Notes: generated from the letters alone by a model not told the origin. Shown: positions 10,770 through 63,611, counted from the first letter of the stretch. The stretch is 64,000 bases of DNA from Macrostomum lignano (GCA_002269645.1 NIVC01002792.1:1-64000), one strand, 5' to 3'. A program made the numbers and translations.

Positions 10770-11205
10770 CTACTGAATGACCTGAAGGGGACAGCGGTGT
10801 CCTGCTGAATAACCTGAAGGGAACAGCGGTGTCCTACTGAATGACCTGAAGGGGGCAGCAGTGTCCTGCTGAAAAACCTGAAGGGGGCAGCAGTGTCCTG
10901 CTGAATAACCTGAAGGGGGCAGCAGTGTCCTACTGAATAACCTGAAGGGGGCAGCAGTGTCCTGCTGAATAACCTGAAGGGGGCAGCAGTGTCCTGCTGA
11001 ATAACCTGAAGGGGGCAGCAGTGTCCTGCTGAATAACCTGAAGGGGCAGCAGTGTCCTGCTGAATAACCTGAAGGGGGCAGCAGTGTCCTACTGATTAAC
11101 CTGAAGGGGGCAGCAGTGTCCTGCTGAAAAACCTGAAGGGGGCAGCAGTGTCCTGCTGAATAACCTGAAGGGGCAGCAGTGTCCTGAAGGGGGCAGCGGT
11201 GTCCC
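10770..11205. repeat. 31-32 bp minisatellite (GTGTCCTGCTGAATAACCTGAAGGGGGCAGCA)n
   Basis: Period read directly; starts ~150 bp after the VAMP stop codon. Confidence 0.95.
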
Positions 11206-12220
11206 GCTGAATGAGCAGAAATAGACGGGGTCCGCGTGTATCTATAGAACACTTTGAAGTCGTGTGGGCCGGATCGACTTCGCATGCTAGCAAATGCTTA
11301 ATTGCCATATCATTCATTCAATTGTGCTGTTGTATATCCGTGACGTACGAGTCACGGAACCGCTTTGATTGTGTTTTTATGCAGGCTCTAAGATTTTTTT
11401 AATTGCTTTTTTTTAATTTCCGCAGCGAATTGCGCAAACGCCCCAAGGTGACTGACTTTTGTCGCGCACTGGTTGATCTGTGCTACTAAATTTTGGCTGT
11501 TTATTAAAATATTAATTCTCGACCCATTCATTCATCTCGATTTGTGCGTGTGTCTAATTGCGCGTAAAGCCGGGCTATAAAATTTACAACCGCTTCCCAT
11601 CCTAATTTTTCTCGCTTTATCAAAATAACTGTCTTCCCGAAATTTAGTTTTTTTACTTAAATTAATCTAGCAAGTTAGTTTCTTCAAGCTGTATTACTAG
11701 CAGTAGTAGTGTCTGGTTGTGCTCCGTTAGTTTTTGCCTTCCAAGCGAACAAACGCAGTAGTTATGTAGAGGTCGTGCGGTCTGCCGTGCTTCAAATTCA
11801 AATGCCGCCATATGATAATATTACTAATAGTAACCACTGCTGCCATGATTTTGTGCAATCCTTTTACGCTCCCAACGTCTTTAATTATTTTTGTATTACT
11901 GCACATTTATGTATGCCTACAAAATAAAATAATTTTTTATTGGTGCGGAATCACGCCTCGGTACGCATGAAGCCACAAATGGGATTTTATAAAGCGCAGA
12001 TTTTATAAAGTCGCGCACTATACTTATTTTACTATTGTAATATTGTAATACAGTAAAGTTTGGGCGCATTATCGAAGCAGTCGGGGCAAACTATGGACCA
12101 ACGGATACTGAAGATGCGTAGAACAAATGCTGGAAATTTTATCGCTGGCTTAATTTACAAATCTTATTGATTATTTAATTCGCAGATCATATGGAAAATT
12201 TGGCCAATGCCGTGAGAGGC

Positions 12221-21500: not shown

Positions 21501-22157
21501 TTTTTGGCCCGCTCGGACCTGGTCCTGTTCCGACTCTGGCCTGGTTCCTACTCCACCGGCCCGGAACTGACCGTCGTTTCTTGATCCCCGGATTGCGACT
21601 TCCCCCCATCATCATCAAGGACGAGTCCCCCGGTCATCAGCAGCGGACATAAAGTTAAGAGCATCACCTGCTAGCTAACAGCGAAGATTGTGACAGCATC
21701 ATCCCGAGTCTACAGCTGCAGAGCATCGAGCCGATTCGGTCACTGTGGATTACCTGGTCTCCGGCTGTTGAGTTTCTGATTGGTTGGGTGAGAGGCTACC
21801 TACACTTGCTTGATTGGGTGATCCCTTATCTGTCCCCTGTTTCAGTAGCTGAATTAGGTGCACACTTTTGCTCATTTTGTTCAGTAGTGCTGTTGCTGAG
21901 GCAGAAATCATTCAATAATACTGCTAGTAGTCTAAGACTCCAATTCAATCTGAAGTGTGAAGTGAACTAAGGAGAAGGTTAAATCTAACAGTTATTTTTA
22001 TCGGTTTTATTTCTTTGTTCGCCGATGGCTCAGATGAGTAGCTAAGCTAGTAGGCGCCGGTCTTGACTTTTGACTTAGCTGCAGGGCTGTCCCGGAGGGG
22101 ACACAGCGGGAAGGCGCGGGCGCCCATTCCGCTAGTCCCTGAACGGCCGACGCGTCG

Positions 22158-25100
22158 CTATGGACGGAGGGTTGGCGCCGCCCAGGGAGGTCCCCCAGTG
22201 TCGCCAGCAGCTATGGTGCTCTCTGGAAAGGAGAGTTCAGCCCTGCGGGTGGCCCGAAGGTAGCGCATGAGCTGATTAAAGTTTTCGGGTTTGCACGCTT
22301 CAGTAATAGATGTGTGTGGCCCGAGGTAAGTGAGTCTGGCCCGCGTGAAGGCGGGACAGATGCTGACGAAATGCTCAGCGGTTTCGTCACCTGAGTTGCA
22401 GAAACTACAGGTGGCGTTGGTGGCGTTGCCCTGCAGGTACTGGTGCCTGGAGAAGCAGCCGTGACCAGAGAGGGTCATGGTGGCAGCCCGGATGTCTCTG
22501 CGCGAGAGGCGCAAGAGGAGCTTCCGGAGCTGGTGAGAGGGCTGAGGGACAGCGCCTCTGGATTGCCTGCAGTTCGTGCGGTTCGCCCAAGTCGAGCGGT
22601 GCTGAGTCCTGATCCACGCTTTGATGCGCGAGTCGATGACACAGCCAGGAATCGGGACAAGAGGTTCGGGGCCGAGAGAGGAGCCGGAGGCACCAACTTT
22701 TGCAAGGGTGTCAGCCAACTCATTTCCTCGGATCCCCACATGCCCCGGAACCCACTTAAGGGTAATTTTGTTGGCGGAACCCAACATGTTGAGGAGTTTG
22801 ATACAGTCAAGGACTGTAGCAGAGTTGGTGCTGCAGCCACTGATGGCGTGCAAGGCAGCTTGGCTGTCCGAATGGAAAATGATGTTCTTACCAGTAACGC
22901 CAGTGGCGAGAAGCTCTGCAGTGCAGGAGCTGATGGCCAGAACTTCATTTTGGAAAACACTGGAGTTGACCCCAGTGTATTGAGCGTGGGTAGCGATGAC
23001 CCTCCCGTTCAGAAAGATTCCAACACCAAAGCCGGTGTTGGCTGACTGCTTAGAACCGTCGGTGTAGCAATGAAGCTCACCAGGGTTCCAATGGTCATTG
23101 ATGTTATCGCGCGAGTCGATAGCTACGGAGTAGCGCTGTCTCAGGTTGAGCGTTGAGGCAATGCCATCGGTGAAGACGCGATTGGCCTGACACTCGTTGA
23201 GAAAGTTGAGGCACAGATCGCTATGCGGGACAAGGTTCCGCTTAGCAGGTGCTCTCATGTAAATGAATTTGACGCCGGCATCAATTAGACGCCGCGTCGT
23301 TCTAGCCGCCTCACCCCTGATGAAGAGGTCAAGAGGCGGAAGATTAAGAAGGCCCCCATGCCAGCAAAGGGCGTGGACCTGGTGGCGTTGCAGATGAGCC
23401 TACACGCTCTGCCTTGGATCGTGTTGAGCAGGTCTGCATGGCTTTTGACCTGGGTAGCGCTAACCCAGACAACAGAGGCGTACGTAATGGCAGGTCTAAC
23501 TACGGAAGTATAGATCCACCAAAGCCGCTTTGGGGATAGACCCCAAGAAGTGCCAAGTGCTCGTCGGAGCTGGGCCAGGATGGCTGAGGCACGCTTAGCT
23601 TTTGCTTTCACGTGGAAGGACCAGTTGAGCCGGTGGTCAAGTGTGACCCCGAGACATCTGGTCTGGTGCGCGAAGGCAATATCTCTGCCGTAGAGCTGCA
23701 GAGGACGTATGTTCCAGCGTAGTCTGCTGGTAAACATAATGGCAACGGTTTTGGGCTCAGAGAGTTCCAAACCATTGTCATTGGCCCAGGATTCTGCTTT
23801 GCGGATAAAGCTCTGCATCAGATCCCTGAGCGTGCTGGGAGACGGTCCTGCCACAATGGCCGTGACGTCATCAGCATACCCGACTTTGAAGACGGGGTCA
23901 GGTCGGGAGTCACTCAGAAGAGCGTCCATGACCAGGTTCCAGAGCGTCGGGGTGAGGACTCCGCCTTGGGGTCCACCCTTACAGACTCTGGTGGAGGCAG
24001 TTTGCCCAAGAAGTTGGGCAGTGACCGTACGGTTGGAGATCATGTACATGATCCACCGTATGAGGGTAGCATGAGCTTTGCGATTTTGAAGGGCCCTCTG
24101 AAACGCTTCAAAGATAACGTTGTCGAAGGCGCCAACAATGTCAAGAAAGAGAGCCAGGGCGTAACCGTCACCCAGTACCGCCCGTTCAATCTTTTCGACA
24201 ATCGCATGCAGGGCGCTGTCAGTCGACCTCCCGGTACGGAAGGCGTGCTGATTATTGCTGAGGGGCATCGCTGTCAGCTCGCAGGAGAGCAGCCGCCAGA
24301 GAATAAGCCTCTCAGTGAGCTTAAGCATTGCTGACGTTAAGCTAATTGGCCGGAAGGCCTTGACGCTTTGGTAGTCACCCTTCCCAGGTTTGGGAATAAA
24401 GACTACTCGAGCTTCAGTCCAGCTTTTGGGAACGTATCCCAGCTGGATAGAGGCCCGCATAAGATTGCGGGTGAGTCTCAGGAACGAGGGTATCTTGGCT
24501 GCTTCACGAAGGAGAACAGGGTAGATACCATCAGGTCCAGGAGATTTGAAGGGTTTGAAGGTTCTGACCGCACGAGCGATTAGGTCTTCAGTGACAATGC
24601 CCGCCGCTAGGGTGGCTCCATCCATCGAATGGTTGGGCTCCGGTCTAGCAGTAGGTACCCTCGGGAAGAATGTGCTAAGCATATGCTGAAGCACTTCTTC
24701 AGGGTCTTTAGTAAGAGAGCCATCATCTTTTTTGATCATGGCTAATTTGGACATTTTGTCCATTGTAAGGGCCTTGACAAGCCTAGAAGTAGGTCTGTCT
24801 TGATCCAATTCATTGCAGAATTGGCGCCACTTACATTCCTTGGCCTTGCGCACTTCAGATTTGAAATTGCGGGAGGCTTGCCGGAAAAGCTCCATGTCCT
24901 CCGGGTTTCCGGTCTTCATGGCACGGCGATGAAGGCTTTTGGCCTTCCGCCTGAGTTTCCCCAGCTCCGGGTTCCACCACGGCGCCGAGGTCTTGCCTTT
25001 GTAGGCGCGAGCAGGACAAGCCGCTTCGTAGGCTTCAATAATGCAACCTGTCAGCGTCTCAGCCATATGATCCACATCCTCGCAGGTCTCAATCGGACGT

Positions 25101-25895
25101 AAGTCCGTGAGTTCCTGCAGGTGCAGATCAAGGGCAGCCTTGTAGGCCGCCCAATCAGTGTTGCGGATATTGCGTCTCCAAGTGATCGGAGACTGGGTTT
25201 TAGTGTCCGCGATGTTAAAGGCGATAAAGCAGTGGTCAGACAGGGAGGGCTCCTCAGACCAGACTCTCCACTCCTCAACTCTGTCAAAGAGTCTTGGGTA
25301 ACGAGTGTGGCGTCGAGGACCTCGGTCCATCTGCCATTATTAAAGGTAGGAGTGCTGCCGCGGTTGCAGAGCATGAGGTTTGTGTTAGAGATGAGGGCCA
25401 GAAGCTCCTCTCCTCTAGTGTTGGTATCTTTGCTGCCCCAGTGCTTGTGGTGCGCGTTGAGGTCGCCCCCTAAGCACAGCTCAGCGTTCTGGGACTCGCA
25501 GTACTGCGCGAGGCGCAGTAAACTCTCAGGAGCAGGGTCTCTGTCGCCTGGGATATAAACCGAGGCAACAAGACACGTACGCGGAGAGAAATGATTAGAT
25601 TGGATGACGCAAAGGTCTCCATCAGAGAGATCAGTCCTCAGCCAAGCCTGGAGATGGCTAGCAGCGAGGATAGCCGCTCTAGGGCGCTGTTCCCCGGGCC
25701 ACACACATAAAAATCAGAGTAGCCAGAGGGAATGTTGGGCAACTTACCGTTGCGCATCCAGGGTTCCTGGATCAGGATGAGGCCTGGCCTGTACAGCTCA
25801 GCAATCTTCATCAGATTTACTGACGCAGATACGCAATGCTGTAAATTAATTTGCAGACAGAATGTCGCTCCTTTGGCAGCGTGGAGCTTAGTCAT
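22158..25895 (-). CDS. Retrotransposon ORF2: APE endonuclease - reverse transcriptase - RNase H - CCHC finger (about three frameshifts)
   Basis: APE: LQINLQHC..LIQEPW and LGGDLNAHH. RT: FRPISLTS, QHAFRTGRST, LDIVGAFD, QGGVLTPTLW, GYADDV. RNase H: YTDGSK, EVLAI, SDSQAAL, WVPGHVGIRGNELAD. Zinc finger: CSFCNSGDETAEHFVSIC. Confidence 0.9.
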
Positions 25896-25934
25896 ACTGT
25901 ATTAAATGCAATTTCTGGCTAGAGCCCAGGGCCA

Positions 25935-27437
25935 TCAAGGAGACTTGGACAACAGATCGTCCTCGTCCCAGGCCGCTGGGGCTTGACTGGGAGATGGGAG
26001 TTGGTCGACGTCCATGGCCTCCTCACCCCCCCGGCCCCCCAGCAGAGTCCTCAGGCTCCGATGACAGGATGGAGGAAGCTTCCTCACCTGCATCTTTACC
26101 TTCAGACCCCACCAGGGTGGCCGAGGAGAGCTCGGATTCCGAAGACCCGGCCTCGTCCTCAACTCCTTCTCCGACTGGCAGGTTTGGTTCCCGGGGCTTG
26201 GCCGGAGCCGTTACCGCGGTCGCCGAACTGCTGCTAGCAGAGGGGCGAGACGCAGCTTTGGCTTTGGGATCGGCTTGCGCCTTTCCTTGGGCCTTAGACT
26301 GCGCCCCGCTCTTGCCGGAGATGCCGGGGTTGGCAGTAGCCTTCCCTTTGGCAGACTTTCCTCGGCGCATCTTGAGCTTGAGGGCACCCAGCTGGAAAGA
26401 GGATCCATTAGGGTACGACTCGCCCAAGTGCTGGAAAGGCCGAGGACAATTGAGTTGCCCGTCTCCCCCCTGCGGACTTTGCGGTGATACACCAGTCCAC
26501 TAGCAGGGAGGTCGGGGTTCAGACGCAGTAGGACCCGGCGAATAACGTCTGGTCCAGCTGCGGTGCTCTTAGCAGGGACGAAAACCACATAGGGTATCGT
26601 CTTTGGACGCTGGCCCTCGCGAAGAAAAAGAGCTCCGCCAAGGTCAGCATCCAAGGAGACCGTCGGTAGCCGCTGGAGCAGCTGCCGAGCGTCCTCCTCG
26701 CTGCTAGGAGCAATAAGAACGAATGTGCTTCGCAGCACCATCCGCTCAATGCCGATGGAGATTCCCTCCTCGACAGTCAGCTCAATCAGATAGGAGTCAA
26801 CAGCACTCCACACTTTTTGAAGCTGATCAGTGGTCCAGTCCTGGTCGCGACCTTGGATGATCACTCCCGGGATTTTGGCCTTGGCCTTCGCCGCAAAGGT
26901 AGCTCCCGAAGGAACCTCCTTGTTGGCAGTGGCCATTTGTTGCGCCGTGGTTTCGGCCTCAGCAGCCGCAGCAGCATCTCCAGGGAGCGCCGCCGCTGAA
27001 CTACTGGAGCTTCCACCGGCCGGCCCGCCTGGTTGCCTTGGGACTCCAGTCGCTTCAGCATCCATGGTGGACGCCGCCGCTTTGGCCCCCGCAGCTCCCT
27101 TCTTGGCCTGCCTTTTGGCGCGTTGTTTAGCGCGTTTGCGCTCAAGCCGAGCCCGCTGAGCTTCATCGGATCTGCCAGATTTGGCCGGTCCTTTAGGCTC
27201 AGAGCTCGCGGTTCCCTTAGATCCACCAGCGGAGCTGGCAGGTCTTAGGGTATTTTGAGTTTGGTAGCTCTGGTCGGATCTGCCAGCAGAGCCAGCCGGT
27301 CCTTCCTTTGCCACAGTTGAATCAGTCGGTTGGGATCTGCCAGCAGGGCCGGCCGGTCCTTCGGACTGAGGTTGGGGTTTAGAAGGGTCCCCGTCCCTAG
27401 AAATAGCTTGTTTATCCATAGTCGGCTCGAAGGCCAT
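25935..27437 (-). CDS. Retrotransposon ORF1 (basic N-terminus; DUF4780-like core; frameshifted)
   Basis: First ATG at 27437. Lys/Arg-rich ARLERKRAKQRAKRQAKK, then VVFVP..IRRVLLRLNPDLP..VLGL, a pattern typical of LOA-clade ORF1 (recalled by eye). No zinc knuckle. Confidence 0.7.
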
Positions 27438-27712
27438 GATAAAAGGTTGGTGGGCTACCCTCAAAGGGGCGCGGTACCCACCCGGCCGCTCCACCTGACC
27501 GGGCAGTAGGCCAATAACACCCTCAAGGCTGGCCCGACACCAGGAGGGGGACCGCTTGCGACCGGACTACTCCCCGGCCTTCCAGCCCATCGGCACGGTC
27601 AACACCTTAGGCATTAGAGAGTACGTTGAGCAGTACCACGGCCTGCAGGTTGGCGAGCCAGACCCGCATACCCAAATTCGGCCGAAGCCACTGGATAGGG
27701 TCGCCAGCGCCG

Positions 27713-27956
27713 GAGCCCAGTCTGTCCAGCAGCCCTAGGGACTGCCTTGAACACACGCGGGGACGAGTACCCTGGGTCGACTTGCGAGACAGCGTGGGGG
27801 GGGGGTCTGCGGCTGCCAGAGGCAAATAGAGGGTGCAGACCTCCCACCAGCCTTGACCTGCTGAAGATAGGGGCAGGCGTGAAGCATCGCAGACCTTAGC
27901 CCATGGGCCTAGTCTGTCTCATACTTCACTGGCATGCTGAATACGCCTTCGCGTGC
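27713..27956 (-). ncRNA. Putative HDV-like self-cleaving ribozyme forming the 5' end of the retrotransposon RNA
   Basis: P1 GCACGCG/CGCGUGU (G1-U wobble), P3 GGG/CCC, L3 UACUCGU, P1.1 AC/GU, P4 hairpin, J4/2 CAGA and P2 GACCCA(G)/CUGGGCUC appear in canonical order. G1 is the first base after the TSD. Confidence 0.75.
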
Positions 27957-28831
27957 TAGGCGCCGGTCACAGTGGACCAATGGCAAGGCAGTTCTCAGTC
28001 GACCAATCTATCAAATCAGTGAGCAAAACTGCCAGAAGTGCAGAATCGGCGCCAGAGATGTACTTTGTGCACTCTAGGGTAGCCAAGCGGCTCGGGTAAA
28101 TGAATCATGCGGTCCCTGAAGTTCGAGTTAGTCTATCATCAGCGCTATGAGAGGCTAGTTGGCGCGTTGAAGGCCAAAAGTACATATCTTCGTATTTAGC
28201 AATGTAATAGTACATGCAGCTACCCCATAGACTCGCCACCGCAAGAACCCCTGCACAAGTCCCCTCTGTACCTGCATGGCCAATGCGATCTAGTCCCAGC
28301 AGTGTCCCCTATCATCGGCTATGACTTCGAGATTGACAGCAAAAAGACACTAGTTGGCAGGTAAGTGCAAAGCCCCTTCTAGTCGGAAGCCCGATTTCGA
28401 GAGTCCCGGTGTGGTGAGCCAGGGCGCACGGGCTGGTGGCAGCAAGTTAGTTGATCTGCGGATTAGCTAATTTCTACTTTCAAAATTCTCCCTGCTCGTC
28501 TCTCGCTGTCCCTCTCTTAGCTATAGGACCTAGACTGCTCGCCACACGATCAAGCTACCATGGGGCTGACCATCTGACAGGAGTGGGGGCCAGGTCTCTA
28601 ATTGATTTATTTCTGAGCCTGAGGCCCGAAGGCTTCCCTAACAAGGAGCCCGAAGGTCGAAACCCATCATGTACCCTAACCTACATCCTTAACCCACCAA
28701 ACCTAATCGTTGGTATAGTCGGCTGGCAGTCAACTTGTCGGTAATAGCTTATTTCAGCAGTTCAGCACAATCTCTGGCGTACTGGCAGGGCGACACGTGG
28801 GCTCCCCTGCTCTTCATCATGGTCTTGTAGA

Positions 28832-32029: not shown

Positions 32030-32680
32030 ATGACATCCAACCCTCTTCTTCGCGCTGTGCTACTCTCTGCTAAGAATGGCGTCCGCCTGTCCGAGCTTCA
32101 GTCGCAGTACCGAGCTTTGGCTGGACACGAGCTGGACCTTCGCGGCCAGAGTCTGCAAAAGTTTATTCAGGATTGTGATGAAGCCTATCTGAGACTGGTC
32201 AATGGAGAGCTGGTTGCTTTCGGCCGGGAGACTGAACAGACTCAGCATATTTGCTCGCTAATTCGGCGACAGAAAACCACAGGCGGAGGCGGCGGCCGGG
32301 GCCACGGTGGACGCAGGCAGCAGCAGCAGCAGCAGGACCAGCAGCAACAGCAGCAGCGCTTTTCAGCTGGTCAGAGCCGTCGCTTCAATTGCGAACGCGA
32401 AGAGAATTTTCAACAAGATAATCATCACCGGGCCACTGGGATGCAGCTGCCGCATCGCCGCTACCAGCATCAGCGCCAACAGCAGGCTTTCGACTATCGC
32501 CGAACTACAGTTCTGTCCATTGTTGATGAGAATTCCACTGATGGCGCTGACCGACTGGTGCGACTCGACCACGCCAGCGGCGGTGGCGCCAGCCTGCGAG
32601 TGACCATCTCAAATAACAAAAACTCAGTTGGTCGCAGAGCTGCGTTTCGGCGATGGCCTCTTGCGGAGTGCGATCTGTGA
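32030..32680 (+). CDS. Single-exon eLOTUS (OST-HTH) domain protein with an RG/Q-rich tail and no Tudor domain
   Basis: LRAVLLSAKNGVRLSELQSQYRALAG...TEQTQHICSLIRRQK closely follows the TDRD7/TDRD5 N-terminal LOTUS pattern. AATAAA at 32783-32788. Confidence 0.85.
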   Translation: MTSNPLLRAVLLSAKNGVRLSELQSQYRALAGHELDLRGQSLQKFIQDCDEAYLRLVNGELVAFGRETEQTQHICSLIRRQKTTGGGGGRGHGGRRQQQQQQDQQQQQQRFSAGQSRRFNCEREENFQQDNHHRATGMQLPHRRYQHQRQQQAFDYRRTTVLSIVDENSTDGADRLVRLDHASGGGASLRVTISNNKNSVGRRAAFRRWPLAECDL

Positions 32681-38355: not shown

Positions 38356-39847
38356 AACAGACTTTGAACAGCTAGCTAAAAAGGTTTCACCTAAAATGCA
38401 TTCTGCGCGATAAATAAGTTTTGGACTCTTACTATTCTGTGTGCTGGACTTCTGTGCCCCTGCCGACGACCAATGCTCAACGATTGGTATGAGCTGTGCA
38501 TTTGTCCCGCTTTTGTGCCGCAACAAGTTGCAAGAATAATAGTGCATGTTTGTTTGCTTACTATTAGTAGAAAAAGTAGATAGTTGGTTGCTACATTCAA
38601 GTCACTCAGTTTTTCTTACACAAGTCCATATTAACAGAGGGAACTGCCAAAAATCAGCACTATCACCCGTTGAAGGTGCCGACGGCGACGGGATGATGAC
38701 GGAACGCTTGAAAGACTAGCTGAGGATGTCCAGCAGTTGCGGCTTGCCCAATGTCGAGGCTTGGTCAGCAAAACTAGAGAAATTCGCATCAGGGTGTCCC
38801 AAGTCACCTGATGCCACCTGTTGAAGGTCCAGAAGCTCCGCCTGGGTGAAGGCCAGTGATCAGCGAAGTCAAAGCTTGTGCAGACACATGTGGTCGCTGC
38901 GCTGCTGGTGAAATTTGGAGGCTTGGCAAGGCTGCACTGAGGCGCAGTGCTATTTGGCGCACAGGGGTGTACTGAATACATTGGCGCTTATGGGAAAAAT
39001 CCGACCTTCTGGCAGAATAGTCGAATATCTGGACGGTCCGGAGGGCTTGCGACTTGATTCTTGTTTGAGAAGGTGCGCAACAAGAATTTAGCTCGTGTTA
39101 TTGAATTTCGTGTGCCTGCGTTGCTCCGTTCCGGCGCTGCAAAAAATGTCAGGGGGGGGGGGAGAATCGGAGGCTTGGTGTTCTTGCTGTTAATCTTCTT
39201 TGTGCAACACATATAGGAGACGATTGCGATATCCAGAGCGAACGCGACTCGTAAAAACGAGACAATTTATTAGACTAGCTGCATTAACTATTTCGATAAG
39301 TCTAGCAAACAGAACATTCTTGTTGACTATTTCTTGAAACTGAGCTCATTTCGTGATGCAGATTGACTTGCTAGGCTGAGTGCAGAAATGACTCGTGACT
39401 TCTCTCACCTGTTGAATCTTTAACAGCTTCAATATCTGTGTCCTCATTAGCAGCTTCACTGAGTCGGAGCATGGACTCCTGACGCTAAGTATCTGGACTG
39501 CAGGGGAGCCACATGAAAATTTCAGTCGTTTTGCAGCTGTCTTAAAGCTTTCTCTGTCAAATCCGGATTCTTAGCTCCCGAAGTCCGCCCACGACAGCTG
39601 GATTGAGAGCTGGGATCAGGTGCCGCAATTGCTCTCCGCCGGTAGGAAAGGGGAAGTGAAAAGTTGGGACACTGCATGACGAGTCGCCTCCTAAACTGAA
39701 AGCCTCATTTCCGCAAAAGGGCCGGATGAGGCATTTAATAGGATGAAGCTGCCTGATCTCTGATTTCTAAGCTCGAAGGGAAATTGCTGCGGGGTACCAG
39801 GTTGCTAATGAGCTCTCAGTCTCATGCTGGACTGCGAGTGAGTGAGT

Positions 39848-41461
<1,614 letters not shown>

Positions 41462-52226: not shown

Positions 52227-53400
52227 GATCATCCAGGTCGAGATCGTCCTGCTGTACAACGCCGAGACTTAAACGTCAATTGTTTTTTGTTGTCGCACCG
52301 TTTTCGTTTTTATTATTATTGTTGTTGTTTTCTAAGAAGCCGGGCACCACAAGGCTGGAGGAGCATCGAGGCATCTGCTGCTGGATCCGTGCCTGCGTCC
52401 TGAGCAGAACGGCTTCCGGCCCCATCGCGGCACAGTGACGCAGATTCTGGCTCTTCGGCGAGTCATCGATCATCGAGTCACCTGATTATCATCTTCATTG
52501 ATTTCAAGAAGGCATTCGACTCGGTCGTCAGGTCTGTACTTCTAAAGGTGCTCTGTGCGTACAATGTGCAATGAGCAGTTTGTCTCTGCCATCATGGCGA
52601 TGTACCGCAATACAAAAGCTGCTCTTTCAACACAGGACGGCCTATCGGAATTCTTTGAGACATCCTCCGGGGTGCTTCAGGGAGATACTCTTGCGCCGTT
52701 CCTGTTCGTTCTGGTGCTTGACTGGGTGCTGCGGACTGCTCTCCCTTCTGACAACGACGGCTTCCTGCTGCAACGACGCGTGGGTCGACGCCAACCGGAG
52801 AGGCGACTCAGCGTGCTCGGCTACGCTGATGATCTCGCCCTGCTGTCCTCGACCGTCGAGGGCGCCCAGCGCCAGCTGGACCGGCTGATGAGCGTTGCGG
52901 CGAGTGTCGGCCTGGGGGTCAACACACAGAAGACCGTCGTGCTCTGCGTGCCGGACGACATCGAGGCTGCGATTTTCTGCCGAGGCGCTGACGGACAGGT
53001 GACGAGGCTTTCGCGCTGTCAGCAGTTCGTCTACCTCGGCACTGAGGGCGGCGCTGTTCCAGGCGGTGATCGAGACCATCCTGTTGTACAACGCCGAGAC
53101 CTGGACGTTGACAGATTCGCTCGAACAGCAGGTCTGCTGCGCGCCGCCTTCAAGATCGGCTACGAGCGAGTGACGAACGCGGCACTCTATCGCCGCAACG
53201 GCCTGTCCCGTCTCAGCAAACTGTTGCGCCATCGGCAACTCCAGCTGGCAGGCCACATCATCTGAGCCGAGTCGTACTGCCCGCAGCCGGTGCAGGAGGT
53301 GCTGCTGCTGACGCTGCAGGCACCCTACCGGCGGGGGCAGGCGCGCACTCGGCGTTTCGTCGACTGCCTGCTGGCTGATGCCGGCGCCCCGGACACTGCC
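52227..53400 (+). mobile_element. Decayed, internally rearranged RTE-like reverse transcriptase fragment
   Basis: FIDFKKAFDS, GVLQGDTLAPFLF, LGYADDLALL and VIETILLYNAETW motifs. The LLYNAET segment also occurs out of order at ~52240-52270. Confidence 0.85.
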
Positions 53401-62150: not shown

Positions 62151-62611
62151 ATGTGTCTAAAGATAAGCAGTAATTTTAATCACAAGTCAGTTTTCAGTCA
62201 TATTCACAGTTAAAGTTCAGTTTTATAAAGTTAAGGCTGGAAATTCAGTCATCAAGTGCACATTGCCCCACACACTGCTGAGTTCTTCGCTGGCCTCTGA
62301 GACTTTGGCAGACGCTTAGAATTCGACTGCAGCCTCCTCAGCTCCCGCAGCCCCAGGCAACCTCAGCTGACCCCGAAAAAGAAAAACATCAGCCGGAGGG
62401 GGCAAACAAACGGCCGAAGAAGCGATGCCGTGATTGAGTGGGGCTTGGGGCGATCGCGGAGCTTCAAGCTCCGCTGGGAAGAACGGGGACAGCAATTATG
62501 CGTTACCCCGGATCCCGGCGGCATCCCCGACCGTCGGGGACTCGGCTGTTTGCGGATTCCGCTAGGAGCTTCTGAGTGGCGATCAAAGATTATAGCACAG
62601 GCCTTCACAAA

Positions 62612-62781
<170 letters not shown>

Positions 62782-63611
62782 TGCAAAAGTGTGCTCACCC
62801 TTATTTAGTCCCCAGCACTTTAACACCCAGAATGAGCAGCAGCTAAGAGAGGAAAGGCCTTAACAGGGGCTACAATAGACTGGGCAATGCTGTGAGTTTC
62901 ATGTATCTTTCGCTTCAACGATCTTCACACGGCTTCCGCTCCGTGCCATTCTAGGTTAAAACTGCCCGGGTTTTCAATAAAACTTGCTTAAAGTTTAACG
63001 AAAAGAAGAGAAATGTGAGCGCAAATCGGGAGTGTTTCGCGTCTGGATCAGCGAGCCGAAGCGTCTGGACTTCAAGCTGAGTTGGCAGGCCTTGCGATTC
63101 CCCAAACAACCCAAAGAGTGCGCGCGGCGCCTCGAACTTTCAAATAAACAGCGTCGTAAAGCCGCAGCAGCAGCAGCAGCAGCAACTGCGTGCTGCAGAG
63201 AAAGCAGAAGAAAGCCATTTTAGTATCCACCCAGAGTTCCAGAGCGCGCAACGGTGGAAATGTGTCCCCCCAAAATATTTTTTGCTTGCTGCATCCTCTG
63301 CGCCCGGTGCAGCTGCGCAGAAAGCTGCTGGCACAGCGGATCCCCAGGCCTGCCCGCCCCCGCCCTGGGTGTCCAGCTGGTGCTGATAGCCGCTGGTCTG
63401 AAAATGATGCGCTGTCGCTCCAGCCCCGGCTGCCAGGGGGGGGGAGAGCTCTCGGGTCGGAGGAGAAACCCGAATTGTGGAAAAATATTTACTTAGAAGG
63501 AAAAAATTCTACAGGTGCTCCGGGACGGCAGAGAATCGTAATTAAGATGAAGTGGAAGCTGCTTCGCTGTGTGGTAAAGTAAATGAGACAGGTTTGACTT
63601 CATGGAAAAGT

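What the first reader, a model, noticed from the sequence alone, without database searches (positions are those of the whole stretch)
27713..27956. HDV-like ribozyme whose cleavage site coincides exactly with the 5' end of a full-length LOA-like retrotransposon
Seen on the minus strand. P1a GCACGCG (27956-27950) is the first 7 nt after the TSD and pairs with P1b CGCGUGU (27759-27753), including the hallmark G1-U wobble. In canonical HDV order follow P2a GACCCA (27778-27773), P3a GGG (27772-27770), L3 UACUCGU (27769-27763), P3b CCC (27762-27760), P1b and J1/4 GU (27752-27751). That GU pairs Watson-Crick with L3 A-C, a covariant P1.1 where HDV has CC/GG. Then come a P4 hairpin UCAAGGCAGUCC-CUA-GGGCUGCUGGA (27750-27725), J4/2 C-A-G-A (catalytic C candidate at 27724, fitting C-N-R-A) and P2b CUGGGCUC (27720-27713). 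J1/2 is long (171 nt) and holds its own hairpin (GUGAAGUAU..CAGAC/GUCUG..AUGCUUCAC, 27929-27879). Established knowledge: HDV-like ribozymes define the 5' ends of R2 and several other non-LTR elements, and R2 ribozymes tolerate long structured J1/2 segments. Inference: this flatworm-type, apparently non-site-specific, RNase H-bearing element may excise its own RNA from read-through transcripts rather than use an internal promoter. Caveat: P2 and P3 compete for one G, and a fourth G (a homopolymer error, as seen elsewhere in this window) would make both helices fully canonical. An alternative register uses CGAAU(U)-UGGGU at ~27681-27670 with a longer P4.
Basis: partly seen in the sequence, partly recalled or inferred. 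Interest (0 to 1): 0.86.

Follow-up and report, generated by a model that had tools for sequence, protein, structure and literature searches.

The report
Probable HDV-like ribozyme heading a LINE
The first 244 bases of a flatworm jumping gene can fold into the knotted shape of a known class of self-cutting RNAs, placed so that the cut would fall exactly on the element's first base; this is an already known trick of such elements, seen here in a new host and a divergent form, and not yet proven by experiment or by sister copies.

Summary
A 5,894-nt non-LTR element (minus strand, 27956 to 22063; ORF1, then APE endonuclease, RT and RNase H) is bounded by a perfect 12-nt target-site duplication. 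Its first 7 nt pair with 27759-27753 in a complete HDV-like double-pseudoknot arrangement. A descriptor validated on a published active ribozyme matches a fixed anchor by chance about 5 times in 10,000. Adding the conserved L3 U/G positions lowers that to about 4 in 100,000. The candidate is the only window hit that also has the G1-U wobble. Five related metagenomic LINEs (36-40% RT identity overall, about 42% in the RT core) carry clear, covarying 5' HDV-like ribozymes at the same place, four of them with J1/2 of about 100-185 nt. Against this: Rfam finds nothing. Covariance models built from those relatives score the candidate at about 0 bits. The two closest relatives with 5' UTRs (52-54% in the RT core) show no such ribozyme. 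P2 is weak (4 bp, a bulge, then 2 bp) and J4/2 is 5 nt. No sister copy was reachable for covariation. Verdict: probably a real, sequence-divergent HDV-like ribozyme (about 0.65), a new member of a known kind. The 'LOA-like' label and 'no internal promoter' remain untested.

The parts
27957..27968 (-). 5' copy of the target-site duplication GACCGGCGCCTA
   Evidence: The exact 12-mer occurs only twice in the window and abuts G27956.
22051..22062 (-). 3' copy of the target-site duplication
   Evidence: Exact 12-mer that abuts the element's last base, 22063.
22063..27956 (-). Non-LTR retrotransposon, 5,894 nt, single copy in the window
   Evidence: TSD bounds and self-BLAST; Pfam Exo_endo_phos_2, RVT_1 and RNase_H in order.
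27950..27956 (-). P1 5' strand GCACGCG; predicted cleavage is immediately 5' of G27956
   Evidence: Pairs with 27759-27753 (7 bp, G1-U wobble). It is the only perfect partner of P1b within 400 nt upstream.
27779..27949 (-). J1/2 peripheral domain, 171 nt (173 nt if P2 starts at 27776); contains a C10 run at 27805-27796
   Evidence: Folded alone, its ends are brought together by GCG/CGC and CAGC/GCUG (z = -2.06). The length lies within the range of relatives (about 100-185 nt) and near active R2 ribozymes.
27879..27929 (-). Stable hairpin inside J1/2 (GUGAAGUAU.../...AUGCUUCAC)
   Evidence: Present in the MFE and centroid structures.
27773..27778 (-). P2 5' strand GACCCA
   Evidence: CCCA pairs with UGGG (27719-27716). 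GA pairs with UC (27714-27713) across the bulged C27715. Duplex energy is -5.2 to -7.8 kcal/mol.
27770..27772 (-). P3 5' strand GGG
   Evidence: Three G-C pairs with 27762-27760.
27763..27769 (-). L3 UACUCGU
   Evidence: U27769 and G27764 occupy the positions of the conserved L3 U-G reverse wobble (PMC13635239). A27768 and C27767 form P1.1. Five of 7 positions are identical to the L3 of active drz-Agam-2-1.
27760..27762 (-). P3 3' strand CCC
27753..27759 (-). P1 3' strand CGCGUGU
27751..27752 (-). J1/4 GU, the 3' strand of P1.1
   Evidence: G27752 pairs with C27767 and U27751 with A27768.
27725..27750 (-). P4 hairpin (10 bp, CUA loop), flush with J1/4 and J4/2
   Evidence: Recovered by unbiased folding.
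27720..27724 (-). J4/2 CAGAC; C27724 is the candidate catalytic cytosine and A27721 the candidate P3-contacting adenine
   Evidence: Fits C-N-R-A with one extra nucleotide. The C...A spacing matches that in solved structures.
27713..27719 (-). P2 3' strand UGGG(C)UC
26211..27494 (-). ORF1 (first ATG at 27437); no Pfam match
   Evidence: It is 88-100% identical to pieces of Macrostomum lignano UniRef gene models.
22242..25856 (-). ORF2 (APE, RT, RNase H) in four frame segments: 25856-25677, 25653-25276, 25279-23357 and 23351-22242
   Evidence: tblastn against the uninterrupted ORF2 of L009, covering residues 31-1228 of 1229; Pfam.
22063..22076 (-). 3' terminal short tandem repeat AAGTCAAAAGTCAA
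   Evidence: Read directly. Relatives end in (GGTAA)n or (AAGAG)n.

Best explanation
The first 244 nt of this Macrostomum non-LTR retrotransposon RNA form an HDV-like (double-pseudoknot) self-cleaving ribozyme. When the element is transcribed, from its own promoter or as part of a longer host transcript, the RNA folds into two coaxial stacks. One is P1 (27956-27950 with 27759-27753), P1.1 and P4; the other is P2 on P3. A 171-nt structured J1/2 domain holds the outer ends of P1 and P2 together. C27724 in J4/2 acts as general acid, and a metal ion sits near the G1-U wobble and the L3 U27769/G27764 pair. The chain is cut immediately 5' of G27956. This leaves an element RNA with a 5'-OH that begins at its own first base and keeps the folded ribozyme as its 5' UTR. 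Target-primed reverse transcription to the end of that RNA then yields copies that start precisely at G1 next to the target-site duplication, as this copy does. What the sequence shows: the pairing pattern, the canonical positions and the exact TSD boundary. What is inferred: folding in vivo, catalysis, co-transcription, and any role of the retained fold in ORF1 translation.
For: (1) All helices and junctions are present in canonical order, and the TSD places the cleavage site at the exact 5' boundary. (2) The descriptor was validated on the active drz-Agam-2-1 ribozyme (sequence from PMC4908430 Table S1). At a fixed anchor, 11 of 20,000 composition-matched shuffles pass, and 0 of 20,000 pass with L3 U1/G6. 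(3) In real sequence the background is 7.9e-4 per anchor in the window and about 4e-5 with L3 U/G, both in the window and in 538 kb of related loci. The candidate is the only window hit that also has G1-U. (4) Five independent related LINEs (L008, L009, L016, L026, L028) carry clear HDV-like ribozymes on the sense strand 2.26-2.55 kb upstream of the RT match, and four have J1/2 of about 100-185 nt. Ten of 13 modelled pairs are compensatory and 0 of 500 shuffles reach the observed values. Each also has its own long-range P1 complement, which the model never saw. (5) They fall in at least two RT clades, so the trait is widespread in this LINE group. (6) J4/2 of 4-6 nt and a bulged P2 occur among those relatives. 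A-U-containing P1.1 helices occur in fast cellular ribozymes (PMC13635239), and J1/2 of 216-498 nt occurs in active R2 ribozymes (PMC3774820). (7) The nested part of the fold costs -92.7 kcal/mol. With P2 (-5 to -8) and P1.1 added, it comes within a few kcal/mol of the MFE of -103.9. (8) J1/2 starts with AA and the J1/4-P4 linker is U(C)AA, as in all six reference ribozymes; this is soft, post hoc evidence.
Against: No Rfam family matches at the gathering threshold, at E<=10, or in 5'-truncated mode on the core. Covariance models built without the candidate, from relatives plus drz-Agam-2-1 (R1) and from five relatives (R2), do not find it in the window and score it -0.1 bits locally. So there is no sequence-level kinship with the relatives' cores (ACC/UCYACGU/GGU ... 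GGCUAA). In the RT tree the window's element groups with L005/L006/L007, not with the ribozyme-bearing clades. L005 and L006 show no HDV-like fold at homologous positions, even with a relaxed descriptor. P2 is the weakest of all examples compared (4 contiguous bp against 6-12), and either J4/2 is 5 nt or P3 loses a pair. The unbiased MFE does not form P1 or P3, P1a sits in a local ACGC/GCGU hairpin, and the overall z-score is only -1.2. My descriptor was loosened after seeing the candidate, and its sensitivity is only about 2 of 6 on the reference set. There is no second copy, no covariation and no transcript or cleavage data.
Confidence: 0.65

Rival explanations
1. Chance resemblance. The 5' UTR is an ordinary GC-rich, hairpin-rich LINE leader, serving as an internal promoter and/or a translation or ORF1p-binding structure. 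The 5' end is set by transcription initiation, and the HDV-like pairing scheme is a coincidence found by a motivated reader.
For: No covariance model recognises it. The closest relatives have a different conserved, hairpin-rich 5' block and no ribozyme. P2 is marginal and J4/2 is off by one. The MFE does not use P1 or P3, and the z-score is unremarkable. A partner for P1b somewhere within 200-400 nt upstream is not rare in itself, since several one-mismatch partners exist.
Against: The anchor was fixed independently by the TSD. The chance rate at a fixed anchor is about 5e-4, and about 4e-5 with the L3 U/G positions. G1-U, an all-G-C P3, a Watson-Crick P1.1, a flush P4 and C-N-R-A all co-occur. 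Related LINEs demonstrably use this device at the same place, with similarly long J1/2.
Confidence: 0.22
2. A real HDV-like fold by descent, but catalytically weak or dead in this copy or family. The weak, bulged P2 and the 5-nt J4/2 reflect decay, or an assembly indel in the GGG run. The exact 5' end would then be a legacy of an active progenitor.
For: P2 is the weakest among all examples compared. Constructs of drz-Agam-2-1 without an extended P2 are far slower (Table S1 of PMC4908430). ORF2 of this copy is in four frame pieces, so the copy, or the assembly, carries indels. Homopolymer runs (C10, G7) are present in the element.
Against: The TSD is a perfect 12/12, which suggests a young insertion that should closely resemble its source RNA. 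Every catalytic-core position is canonical. J4/2 of 4-6 nt and a bulged P2 occur in relatives whose helices covary.
Confidence: 0.12

Closest known systems
drz-Agam-2 family (HDV-like ribozymes of Anopheles gambiae, associated with non-LTR elements)
   Same: Double pseudoknot with a 7-bp P1, a 3-bp P3, a 7-nt L3 with U1, C3, C5, G6 and U7 (5 of 7 identical to the candidate), a 2-bp P1.1, C-N-R-A in J4/2, an A-rich start of J1/2 and a structured J1/2 domain (PMC4908430).
   Different: In Agam-2-1, J1/2 is 44 nt, P2 is 7 bp, J4/2 is 4 nt, P1.1 is two G-C pairs and the cleavage-site pair is G-C. The Rfam models for this family do not match the candidate.
R2 element ribozymes (insects, planaria and others)
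   Same: An HDV-like ribozyme in the 5' UTR that defines or processes the element's 5' end. Very long J1/2 loops (216-498 nt in silkmoths) are compatible with activity (PMC3774820).
   Different: R2 is site-specific in 28S rDNA, has a restriction-like endonuclease and a single ORF, and is co-transcribed by Pol I. In most species cleavage is upstream, within the 28S sequence. The window's element has an APE endonuclease, two ORFs and RNase H, and lies in a non-rDNA site.
baggins, RTE, R4/Dong and L1Tc 5' HDV-like ribozymes
   Same: Cleavage at the exact 5' end of elements that are not rDNA-specific. The proposed function is release from co-transcripts and support of translation (PMC3774820; PMC6765202; PMC3185411 and PMC3383444).
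   Different: Different hosts (insects, nematodes, trypanosomes). L1Tc combines the ribozyme with an internal promoter in the same 77 nt. That baggins belongs to the LOA clade is my own knowledge and was not checked here. The primary paper (Ruminski et al. 2011) could not be read.
5' HDV-like ribozymes of the related metagenomic LINEs found here (L008, L009/L038, L016, L026, L028)
   Same: Same element architecture (ORF1 and an APE-RT-RNase H ORF2). The ribozyme has the same position and orientation upstream of ORF1, J1/2 is about 100-185 nt in four of five, G1-U occurs in two, and the 3' ends are short tandem repeats.
   Different: Their cores are mutually alignable (ACC or GCC / [U/G]C[C/U][A/U]CGU / GGU or GGC, J1/4 GG or AG, GGCUAA-type J4/2), and a model of them scores the candidate at about 0 bits. 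They sit in other RT clades.
Twister-variant ribozymes at the 5' end of Schistosoma mansoni Perere-3
   Same: A flatworm, APE-type, non-site-specific LINE with a 5' self-cleaving ribozyme whose cleavage site abuts the TSD (PMC8501958).
   Different: A different ribozyme class (twister) and a different LINE clade (RTE). There the TSD itself supplies the 5' strand of P1, whereas here P1 lies wholly inside the element.

Membership tests
HDV-like (double-pseudoknot) self-cleaving ribozymes | Strand order P1-J1/2-P2-P3-L3-P3'-P1'-J1/4-P4-J4/2-P2', giving a nested double pseudoknot | tested here: met
   All segments are present in this order. The candidate passes a descriptor that correctly parses the active drz-Agam-2-1.
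HDV-like (double-pseudoknot) self-cleaving ribozymes | Cleavage at the first nucleotide of a P1 of about 7 bp, often with a G-U wobble at the cleavage site | tested here: met
   P1 is 7 bp with G27956-U27753. The wobble is not universal: it is G-C in drz-Agam-2-1, L008 and L009.
HDV-like (double-pseudoknot) self-cleaving ribozymes | Two-base-pair P1.1 between L3 and J1/4 | tested here: met
   A27768-U27751 and C27767-G27752. A-U-containing P1.1 helices are seen in fast cellular ribozymes.
HDV-like (double-pseudoknot) self-cleaving ribozymes | Catalytic cytosine in J4/2, with an adenine three positions later that contacts P3 | tested here: met
   At sequence level only: C27724 and A27721 (C-A-G-A). 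Catalysis itself is not testable here.
HDV-like (double-pseudoknot) self-cleaving ribozymes | L3 of about 7-8 nt with the U and G of the metal-binding reverse wobble | tested here: met
   L3 is UACUCGU, with U27769 and G27764 at positions 1 and 6.
HDV-like (double-pseudoknot) self-cleaving ribozymes | A stable P2 stacked directly on a 3-bp P3 | tested here: inconclusive
   There are only 4 contiguous bp, then a bulge and 2 bp. G27772 is claimed by both P2 and P3, and J4/2 becomes 5 nt. The reference ribozymes have 6-12 bp.
HDV-like (double-pseudoknot) self-cleaving ribozymes | Match to a curated covariance model of an HDV-like family (Rfam) | tested here: not met
   No match at the gathering threshold, at E<=10, or on the truncated core. 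These models are lineage-specific and do not score pseudoknots.
HDV-like (double-pseudoknot) self-cleaving ribozymes | Compensatory base changes across homologous copies | not testable with these tools
   No second copy exists in the window.
HDV-like (double-pseudoknot) self-cleaving ribozymes | Mg2+-dependent self-scission giving a 5'-OH product | not testable with these tools
   This needs an experiment.
Ribozyme lineage of the related LINEs (L008, L009, L016, L026, L028) | Significant score against a covariance model of their P2a-to-P2b core | tested here: not met
   Models R1 and R2 find each other's members (E from 3e-16 to 4e-3). They do not find the candidate, which scores -0.1 bits.
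LOA clade of non-LTR retrotransposons | APE endonuclease, RT and C-terminal RNase H in ORF2, plus a separate ORF1 | tested here: met
   Pfam domains are in order, and ORF2 is collinear with a relative's 1,229-aa ORF2. This domain set is shared with the I, Tad1 and other clades, so it is not diagnostic.
LOA clade of non-LTR retrotransposons | Phylogenetic placement of the RT with reference LOA elements (Loa, baggins, bilbo, Lian) | not tested
The RT tree contains only unnamed metagenomic relatives.

The most novel reading that the evidence does not exclude
The window's LINE clade carries its own sequence-divergent lineage of HDV-like ribozyme: an A-U/C-G P1.1, a GGG/CCC P3, a minimal bulged P2 and a 5-nt J4/2. 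It is unrecognisable to every existing covariance model, including models of the ribozymes in sister LINE clades. Either 5' HDV-like ribozymes are ancestral to this whole RNase H-bearing LINE group and have diverged beyond sequence recognition, or the fold arose again independently. Either way, model-based surveys would be missing a substantial share of retrotransposon ribozymes.
Probability: 0.3. Interest if true: 0.55.

Novelty: new member of a known kind. Interest (0 to 1): 0.42.

Why it matters
If it cleaves, this would be the first HDV-like ribozyme described for a macrostomid flatworm, and for this lineage of two-ORF, RNase H-bearing LINEs. It would also show that such elements can be missed entirely by Rfam-type models when J1/2 is long and the core has drifted. 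In practice it gives an exact, testable prediction for the 5' end of an abundant Macrostomum lignano repeat: a 5'-OH at G27956. The five ribozymes found in metagenomic relatives give a small comparative set for studying how long J1/2 'pinch' domains evolve. It does not change the general picture, because 5' HDV-like ribozymes in non-LTR elements have been known since 2010-2011.

Tried and rejected
(1) Rfam over the whole window, over 1 kb at E<=10, and over the core alone to permit a 5'-truncated match found nothing relevant.

(2) Exact-protein look-ups intended to reach the source genome or sister copies returned nothing on record. The ORF1 homologues are only three M. lignano UniRef gene models without DNA, and none of them extends into the 5' UTR.

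(3) A DNA pattern for the candidate core gave 0 hits in the metagenome collection. The RT protein found no relative in the prokaryotic genome collection.

(4) My first descriptor required P4 to close flush at both ends. It missed the published positive control, so the survey made with it was discarded and redone.

(5) MAFFT misaligned the variable P4 of the ribozyme cores, so I replaced that alignment with an equal-length alignment of consensus columns.

(6) The alternative register (J4/2 CGAA at 27680, P2b UGGGU) was rejected because its 70-nt 'P4' folds into two separate hairpins with no closing helix, and its constrained energy is worse (-107.5 against -113.8 kcal/mol).

(7) I attempted an HDV-like reading of the conserved 5' block of L005/L006. 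Hand parses required a 15-16-nt L3 or left no room for P2. The relaxed scan gave no hit at homologous positions. The weak model match in L006 (E = 0.33) has U in place of the catalytic C in L005.

(8) TSDs abutting the cleavage sites in relatives could not be read, because the contigs end in or near the 3' repeats.

(9) The upstream flank was searched for a gene or promoter that could drive co-transcription. No Pfam domain was found. The promoter scan uses a bacterial consensus and is not applicable to this organism.

(10) The other window anchors with the L3 U/G signature (32801+, 10640-, 57034-, 57055-) have AU-rich or wobble-laden helices and are not next to any retroelement, so I treat them as background.

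Full report
**The observation**

The 12-mer GACCGGCGCCTA occurs only twice in 64 kb, at 27968-27957 and 22062-22051. The two copies bracket a 5,894-nt insertion that begins GCACGCG at 27956 and ends AAGTCAAAAGTCAA at 22063. The bases outside the repeat differ on both sides, so the boundary is unambiguous. The insertion is single-copy in the window.

It encodes ORF1 (26211-27494, first ATG at 27437, no Pfam match). It then encodes an APE-type endonuclease, a reverse transcriptase and RNase H, in that order. ORF2 is collinear with residues 31-1228 of a relative's uninterrupted 1,229-aa ORF2. It is split into four frame segments, with shifts near 25677-25653, about 25279 and about 23354. The element is therefore full-length in extent but not intact as assembled. 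ORF1 and parts of ORF2 are 88-100% identical to pieces of chimeric Macrostomum lignano gene models in UniRef. So the window comes from that flatworm or a very close relative.

**The fold**

- P1 is GCACGCG/CGCGUGU, 7 bp, with G27956-U27753 at the cleavage site.
- P3 is GGG/CCC.
- L3 is UACUCGU.
- P1.1 is A27768-U27751 plus C27767-G27752.
- P4 is a 10-bp hairpin that abuts both J1/4 and J4/2.
- J4/2 begins C27724-A-G-A27721.

If P3 keeps three pairs, contiguous P2 is only CCCA/UGGG, followed by a bulged C and then GA/UC, and J4/2 is 5 nt.

**Is it more than chance?**

I wrote an explicit descriptor: P1 of 7 bp, P3 of 3 bp, L3 of 6-9 nt, a 2-bp P1.1, a P4 helix, C-N-R-A(N), P2 of at least 4 bp, and J1/2 up to 300 nt. 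My first version missed a published, fast-cleaving ribozyme, drz-Agam-2-1 (sequence from Table S1 of PMC4908430), because it forced P4 to close flush. After I allowed 0-3 unpaired nucleotides at each end of P4, it parsed that control exactly as published. All nulls were then recomputed.

| Null | Descriptor alone | Plus L3 U1/G6 | Plus G1-U wobble |
|---|---|---|---|
| 20,000 dinucleotide shuffles of the 5' UTR, P1a fixed at the first base | 11 | 0 | 0 |
| Window, 127,200 anchors on both strands | 100 | 5 | 1 (27956) |
| 538 kb of related LINE loci | about 6e-4 per anchor | about 4e-5 per anchor, after removing the real L009/L038 ribozyme | 1 (L013, antisense control region) |

Because the TSD fixed the anchor independently, the coincidence has a probability of roughly 5e-4 to 4e-5. 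Two caveats apply. The descriptor was loosened after I had seen the candidate. Its sensitivity on the six reference ribozymes is only about one in three.

**Thermodynamics is neutral**

Unbiased folding recovers P4 and the J1/2 hairpin, but not P1 or P3. P1a is taken into a 4-bp local hairpin, and the z-score is -1.2. With P1 and P3 enforced and the pseudoknot strands held open, the energy is -92.7 kcal/mol. Adding P2 (-5 to -8) and P1.1 brings it within a few kcal/mol of the MFE of -103.9. Folded alone, J1/2 closes on itself so that its two ends lie together (z = -2.1). That is the arrangement shown to accelerate large HDV-like ribozymes (PMC4908430).

**Comparative evidence**

No sister copy could be reached, so the decisive covariation test is missing. 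A profile search with the RT region returned 80 metagenomic relatives at 30-44% identity. Seven further loci came from protein look-ups.

Five independent elements carry clear HDV-like ribozymes on the sense strand, 2.26-2.55 kb upstream of the RT match and just upstream of ORF1. They are L009 (L038 is the same locus assembled twice), L028, L016, L008 and L026.
- **L009:** P1 GGGGGGG/CCCCCCC, J1/2 129 nt, a 12-bp P2, and the core ACC/UCUACGU/GGU.
- **L028:** G1-U wobble, J1/2 160 nt.
- **L016:** G1-U wobble, a 9-bp P2 with a bulged A, and a 6-nt J4/2.
- **L008:** P3 GCC/GGC, J1/2 about 185 nt.
- **L026:** L3 GCCUCGU.

In an alignment of the five, 10 of 13 modelled pairs show compensatory changes, 94% of cells are paired, and 0 of 500 shuffles reach those values. 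That alignment was fitted to the model. Each of the five also has a long-range P1 complement that the model never saw. They fall in at least two clades of an RT tree. So 5' HDV-like ribozymes with long J1/2 domains are a recurrent feature of this LINE group. The features that made the candidate look odd, a J4/2 longer than 4 nt and a bulged P2, also occur among them.

**Evidence that cuts the other way**

- Rfam finds nothing at any threshold, even when only the core is submitted so that a 5'-truncated match is possible.
- Two covariance models built without the candidate do not find it in the window and score it -0.1 bits locally. R1 was built from three relatives plus drz-Agam-2-1, and R2 from the five relatives. 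The candidate shares their fold and catalytic positions but not their sequence.
- In the RT tree the window's element belongs to a separate deep lineage with L005, L006 and L007, at 52-54% identity in the RT core.
- L005 and L006 have a 5' block that is more conserved (78.5%) than their ORFs (66-68%) and contains hairpins with compensatory changes. It could not be read as an HDV-like pseudoknot by descriptor, model or hand.

The candidate's own clade therefore gives no support.

**Comparison with the literature**

HDV-like ribozymes that cleave at, or just upstream of, the 5' end of non-LTR elements are established for several families. These are R2, R4/Dong, RTE, baggins and L1Tc (PMC3774820; PMC6765202; PMC3185411 and PMC3383444). 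J1/2 loops of 216-498 nt are compatible with activity in silkmoth R2. P1.1 helices containing U:A and even non-Watson-Crick pairs occur in very fast cellular ribozymes. The same structural work defines the catalytic C, the adenine three positions later and the L3 U-G reverse wobble (PMC13635239). In flatworms, planarian R2 has an HDV-like ribozyme, and Schistosoma Perere-3 uses a twister variant whose cleavage site abuts the TSD (PMC8501958). I found no paper linking Macrostomum with ribozymes of this kind. The primary paper on baggins and RTE ribozymes was not available to read.

**Verdict**

The most likely reading is a genuine HDV-like self-cleaving ribozyme that defines the element's 5' end (about 0.65). 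It is sequence-divergent from those of related LINEs and has a marginal P2. The rivals are a coincidental fold in an ordinary structured leader (about 0.22) and a real but crippled ribozyme (about 0.12).

The upstream flank shows no recognisable gene.

This is a new member of a known kind and of moderate interest. An alignment of genomic copies and a simple in vitro cleavage assay would settle it.

Noticed in passing
L009 2666-2880 (L038 135-350 is the same locus); L028 45-292; L016 848-975; L008 157-436; L026 575-760: Five metagenomic LINEs related to the window's element carry clear, mutually covarying 5' HDV-like ribozymes. Four have J1/2 domains of about 100-185 nt. None is matched by an Rfam HDV-family model in the loci I scanned.
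   Followed up: partly
L005 87-247 and L006 79-235: In the window's closest relatives, a 5'-UTR block is more conserved (78.5%) than the ORFs (66-68%). It contains hairpins with compensatory changes (CUGCACG/CGUGUAG against CUGCAUG/CAUGCAG). It is not an HDV-like fold by any test tried, and its function is unknown (promoter or another structured RNA).
   Followed up: partly
window 39700-41450 and 62611-62792: A large microsatellite-like array with 8- and 12-nt spacing has an inverted, 90-94% complementary copy about 22 kb away.
   Followed up: no
window 10856-11209 (-): A run of near-identical 16-nt hairpin matches, mostly 32 nt apart, was picked up by the P4 part of my covariance model. It is a tandem repeat of small hairpins.
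   Followed up: no
window 27796-27805 and 26026-26032 (-): A C10 run inside J1/2 and a G7 run in the ORF1-ORF2 region are likely hot spots for assembly indels. ORF2 changes frame three times (about 25677-25653, 25279 and 23354).
   Followed up: partly
window 52369-52944 (+): A weak RT-like fragment (24% identity to P0017 over 203 aa) marks another, degraded retroelement.
   Followed up: no
window 26113-27364 and 22332-25838 (-); proteins P0001, P0002, P0006, P0116: UniRef Macrostomum lignano gene models named as a GPCR, UBC9 and others contain exons that are pieces of this LINE's ORF1 and ORF2 (88-100% identity). Those models are chimeric with transposon sequence.
   Followed up: partly
window 32030-32680 (+): A 216-aa ORF has a sub-threshold OST-HTH/LOTUS match (20.2 bits, below the 23.8-bit cut-off).
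   Followed up: no
L008, L009, L016 and L026, downstream of ORF2: The relatives share a conserved 3' UTR motif (GGGGATGCGCATTGGGCC...CCTCAGCGC...CCCCGAAG), followed by short tandem repeats (GGTAA or AAGAG). This is probably the RT recognition element for target-primed reverse transcription.
   Followed up: no
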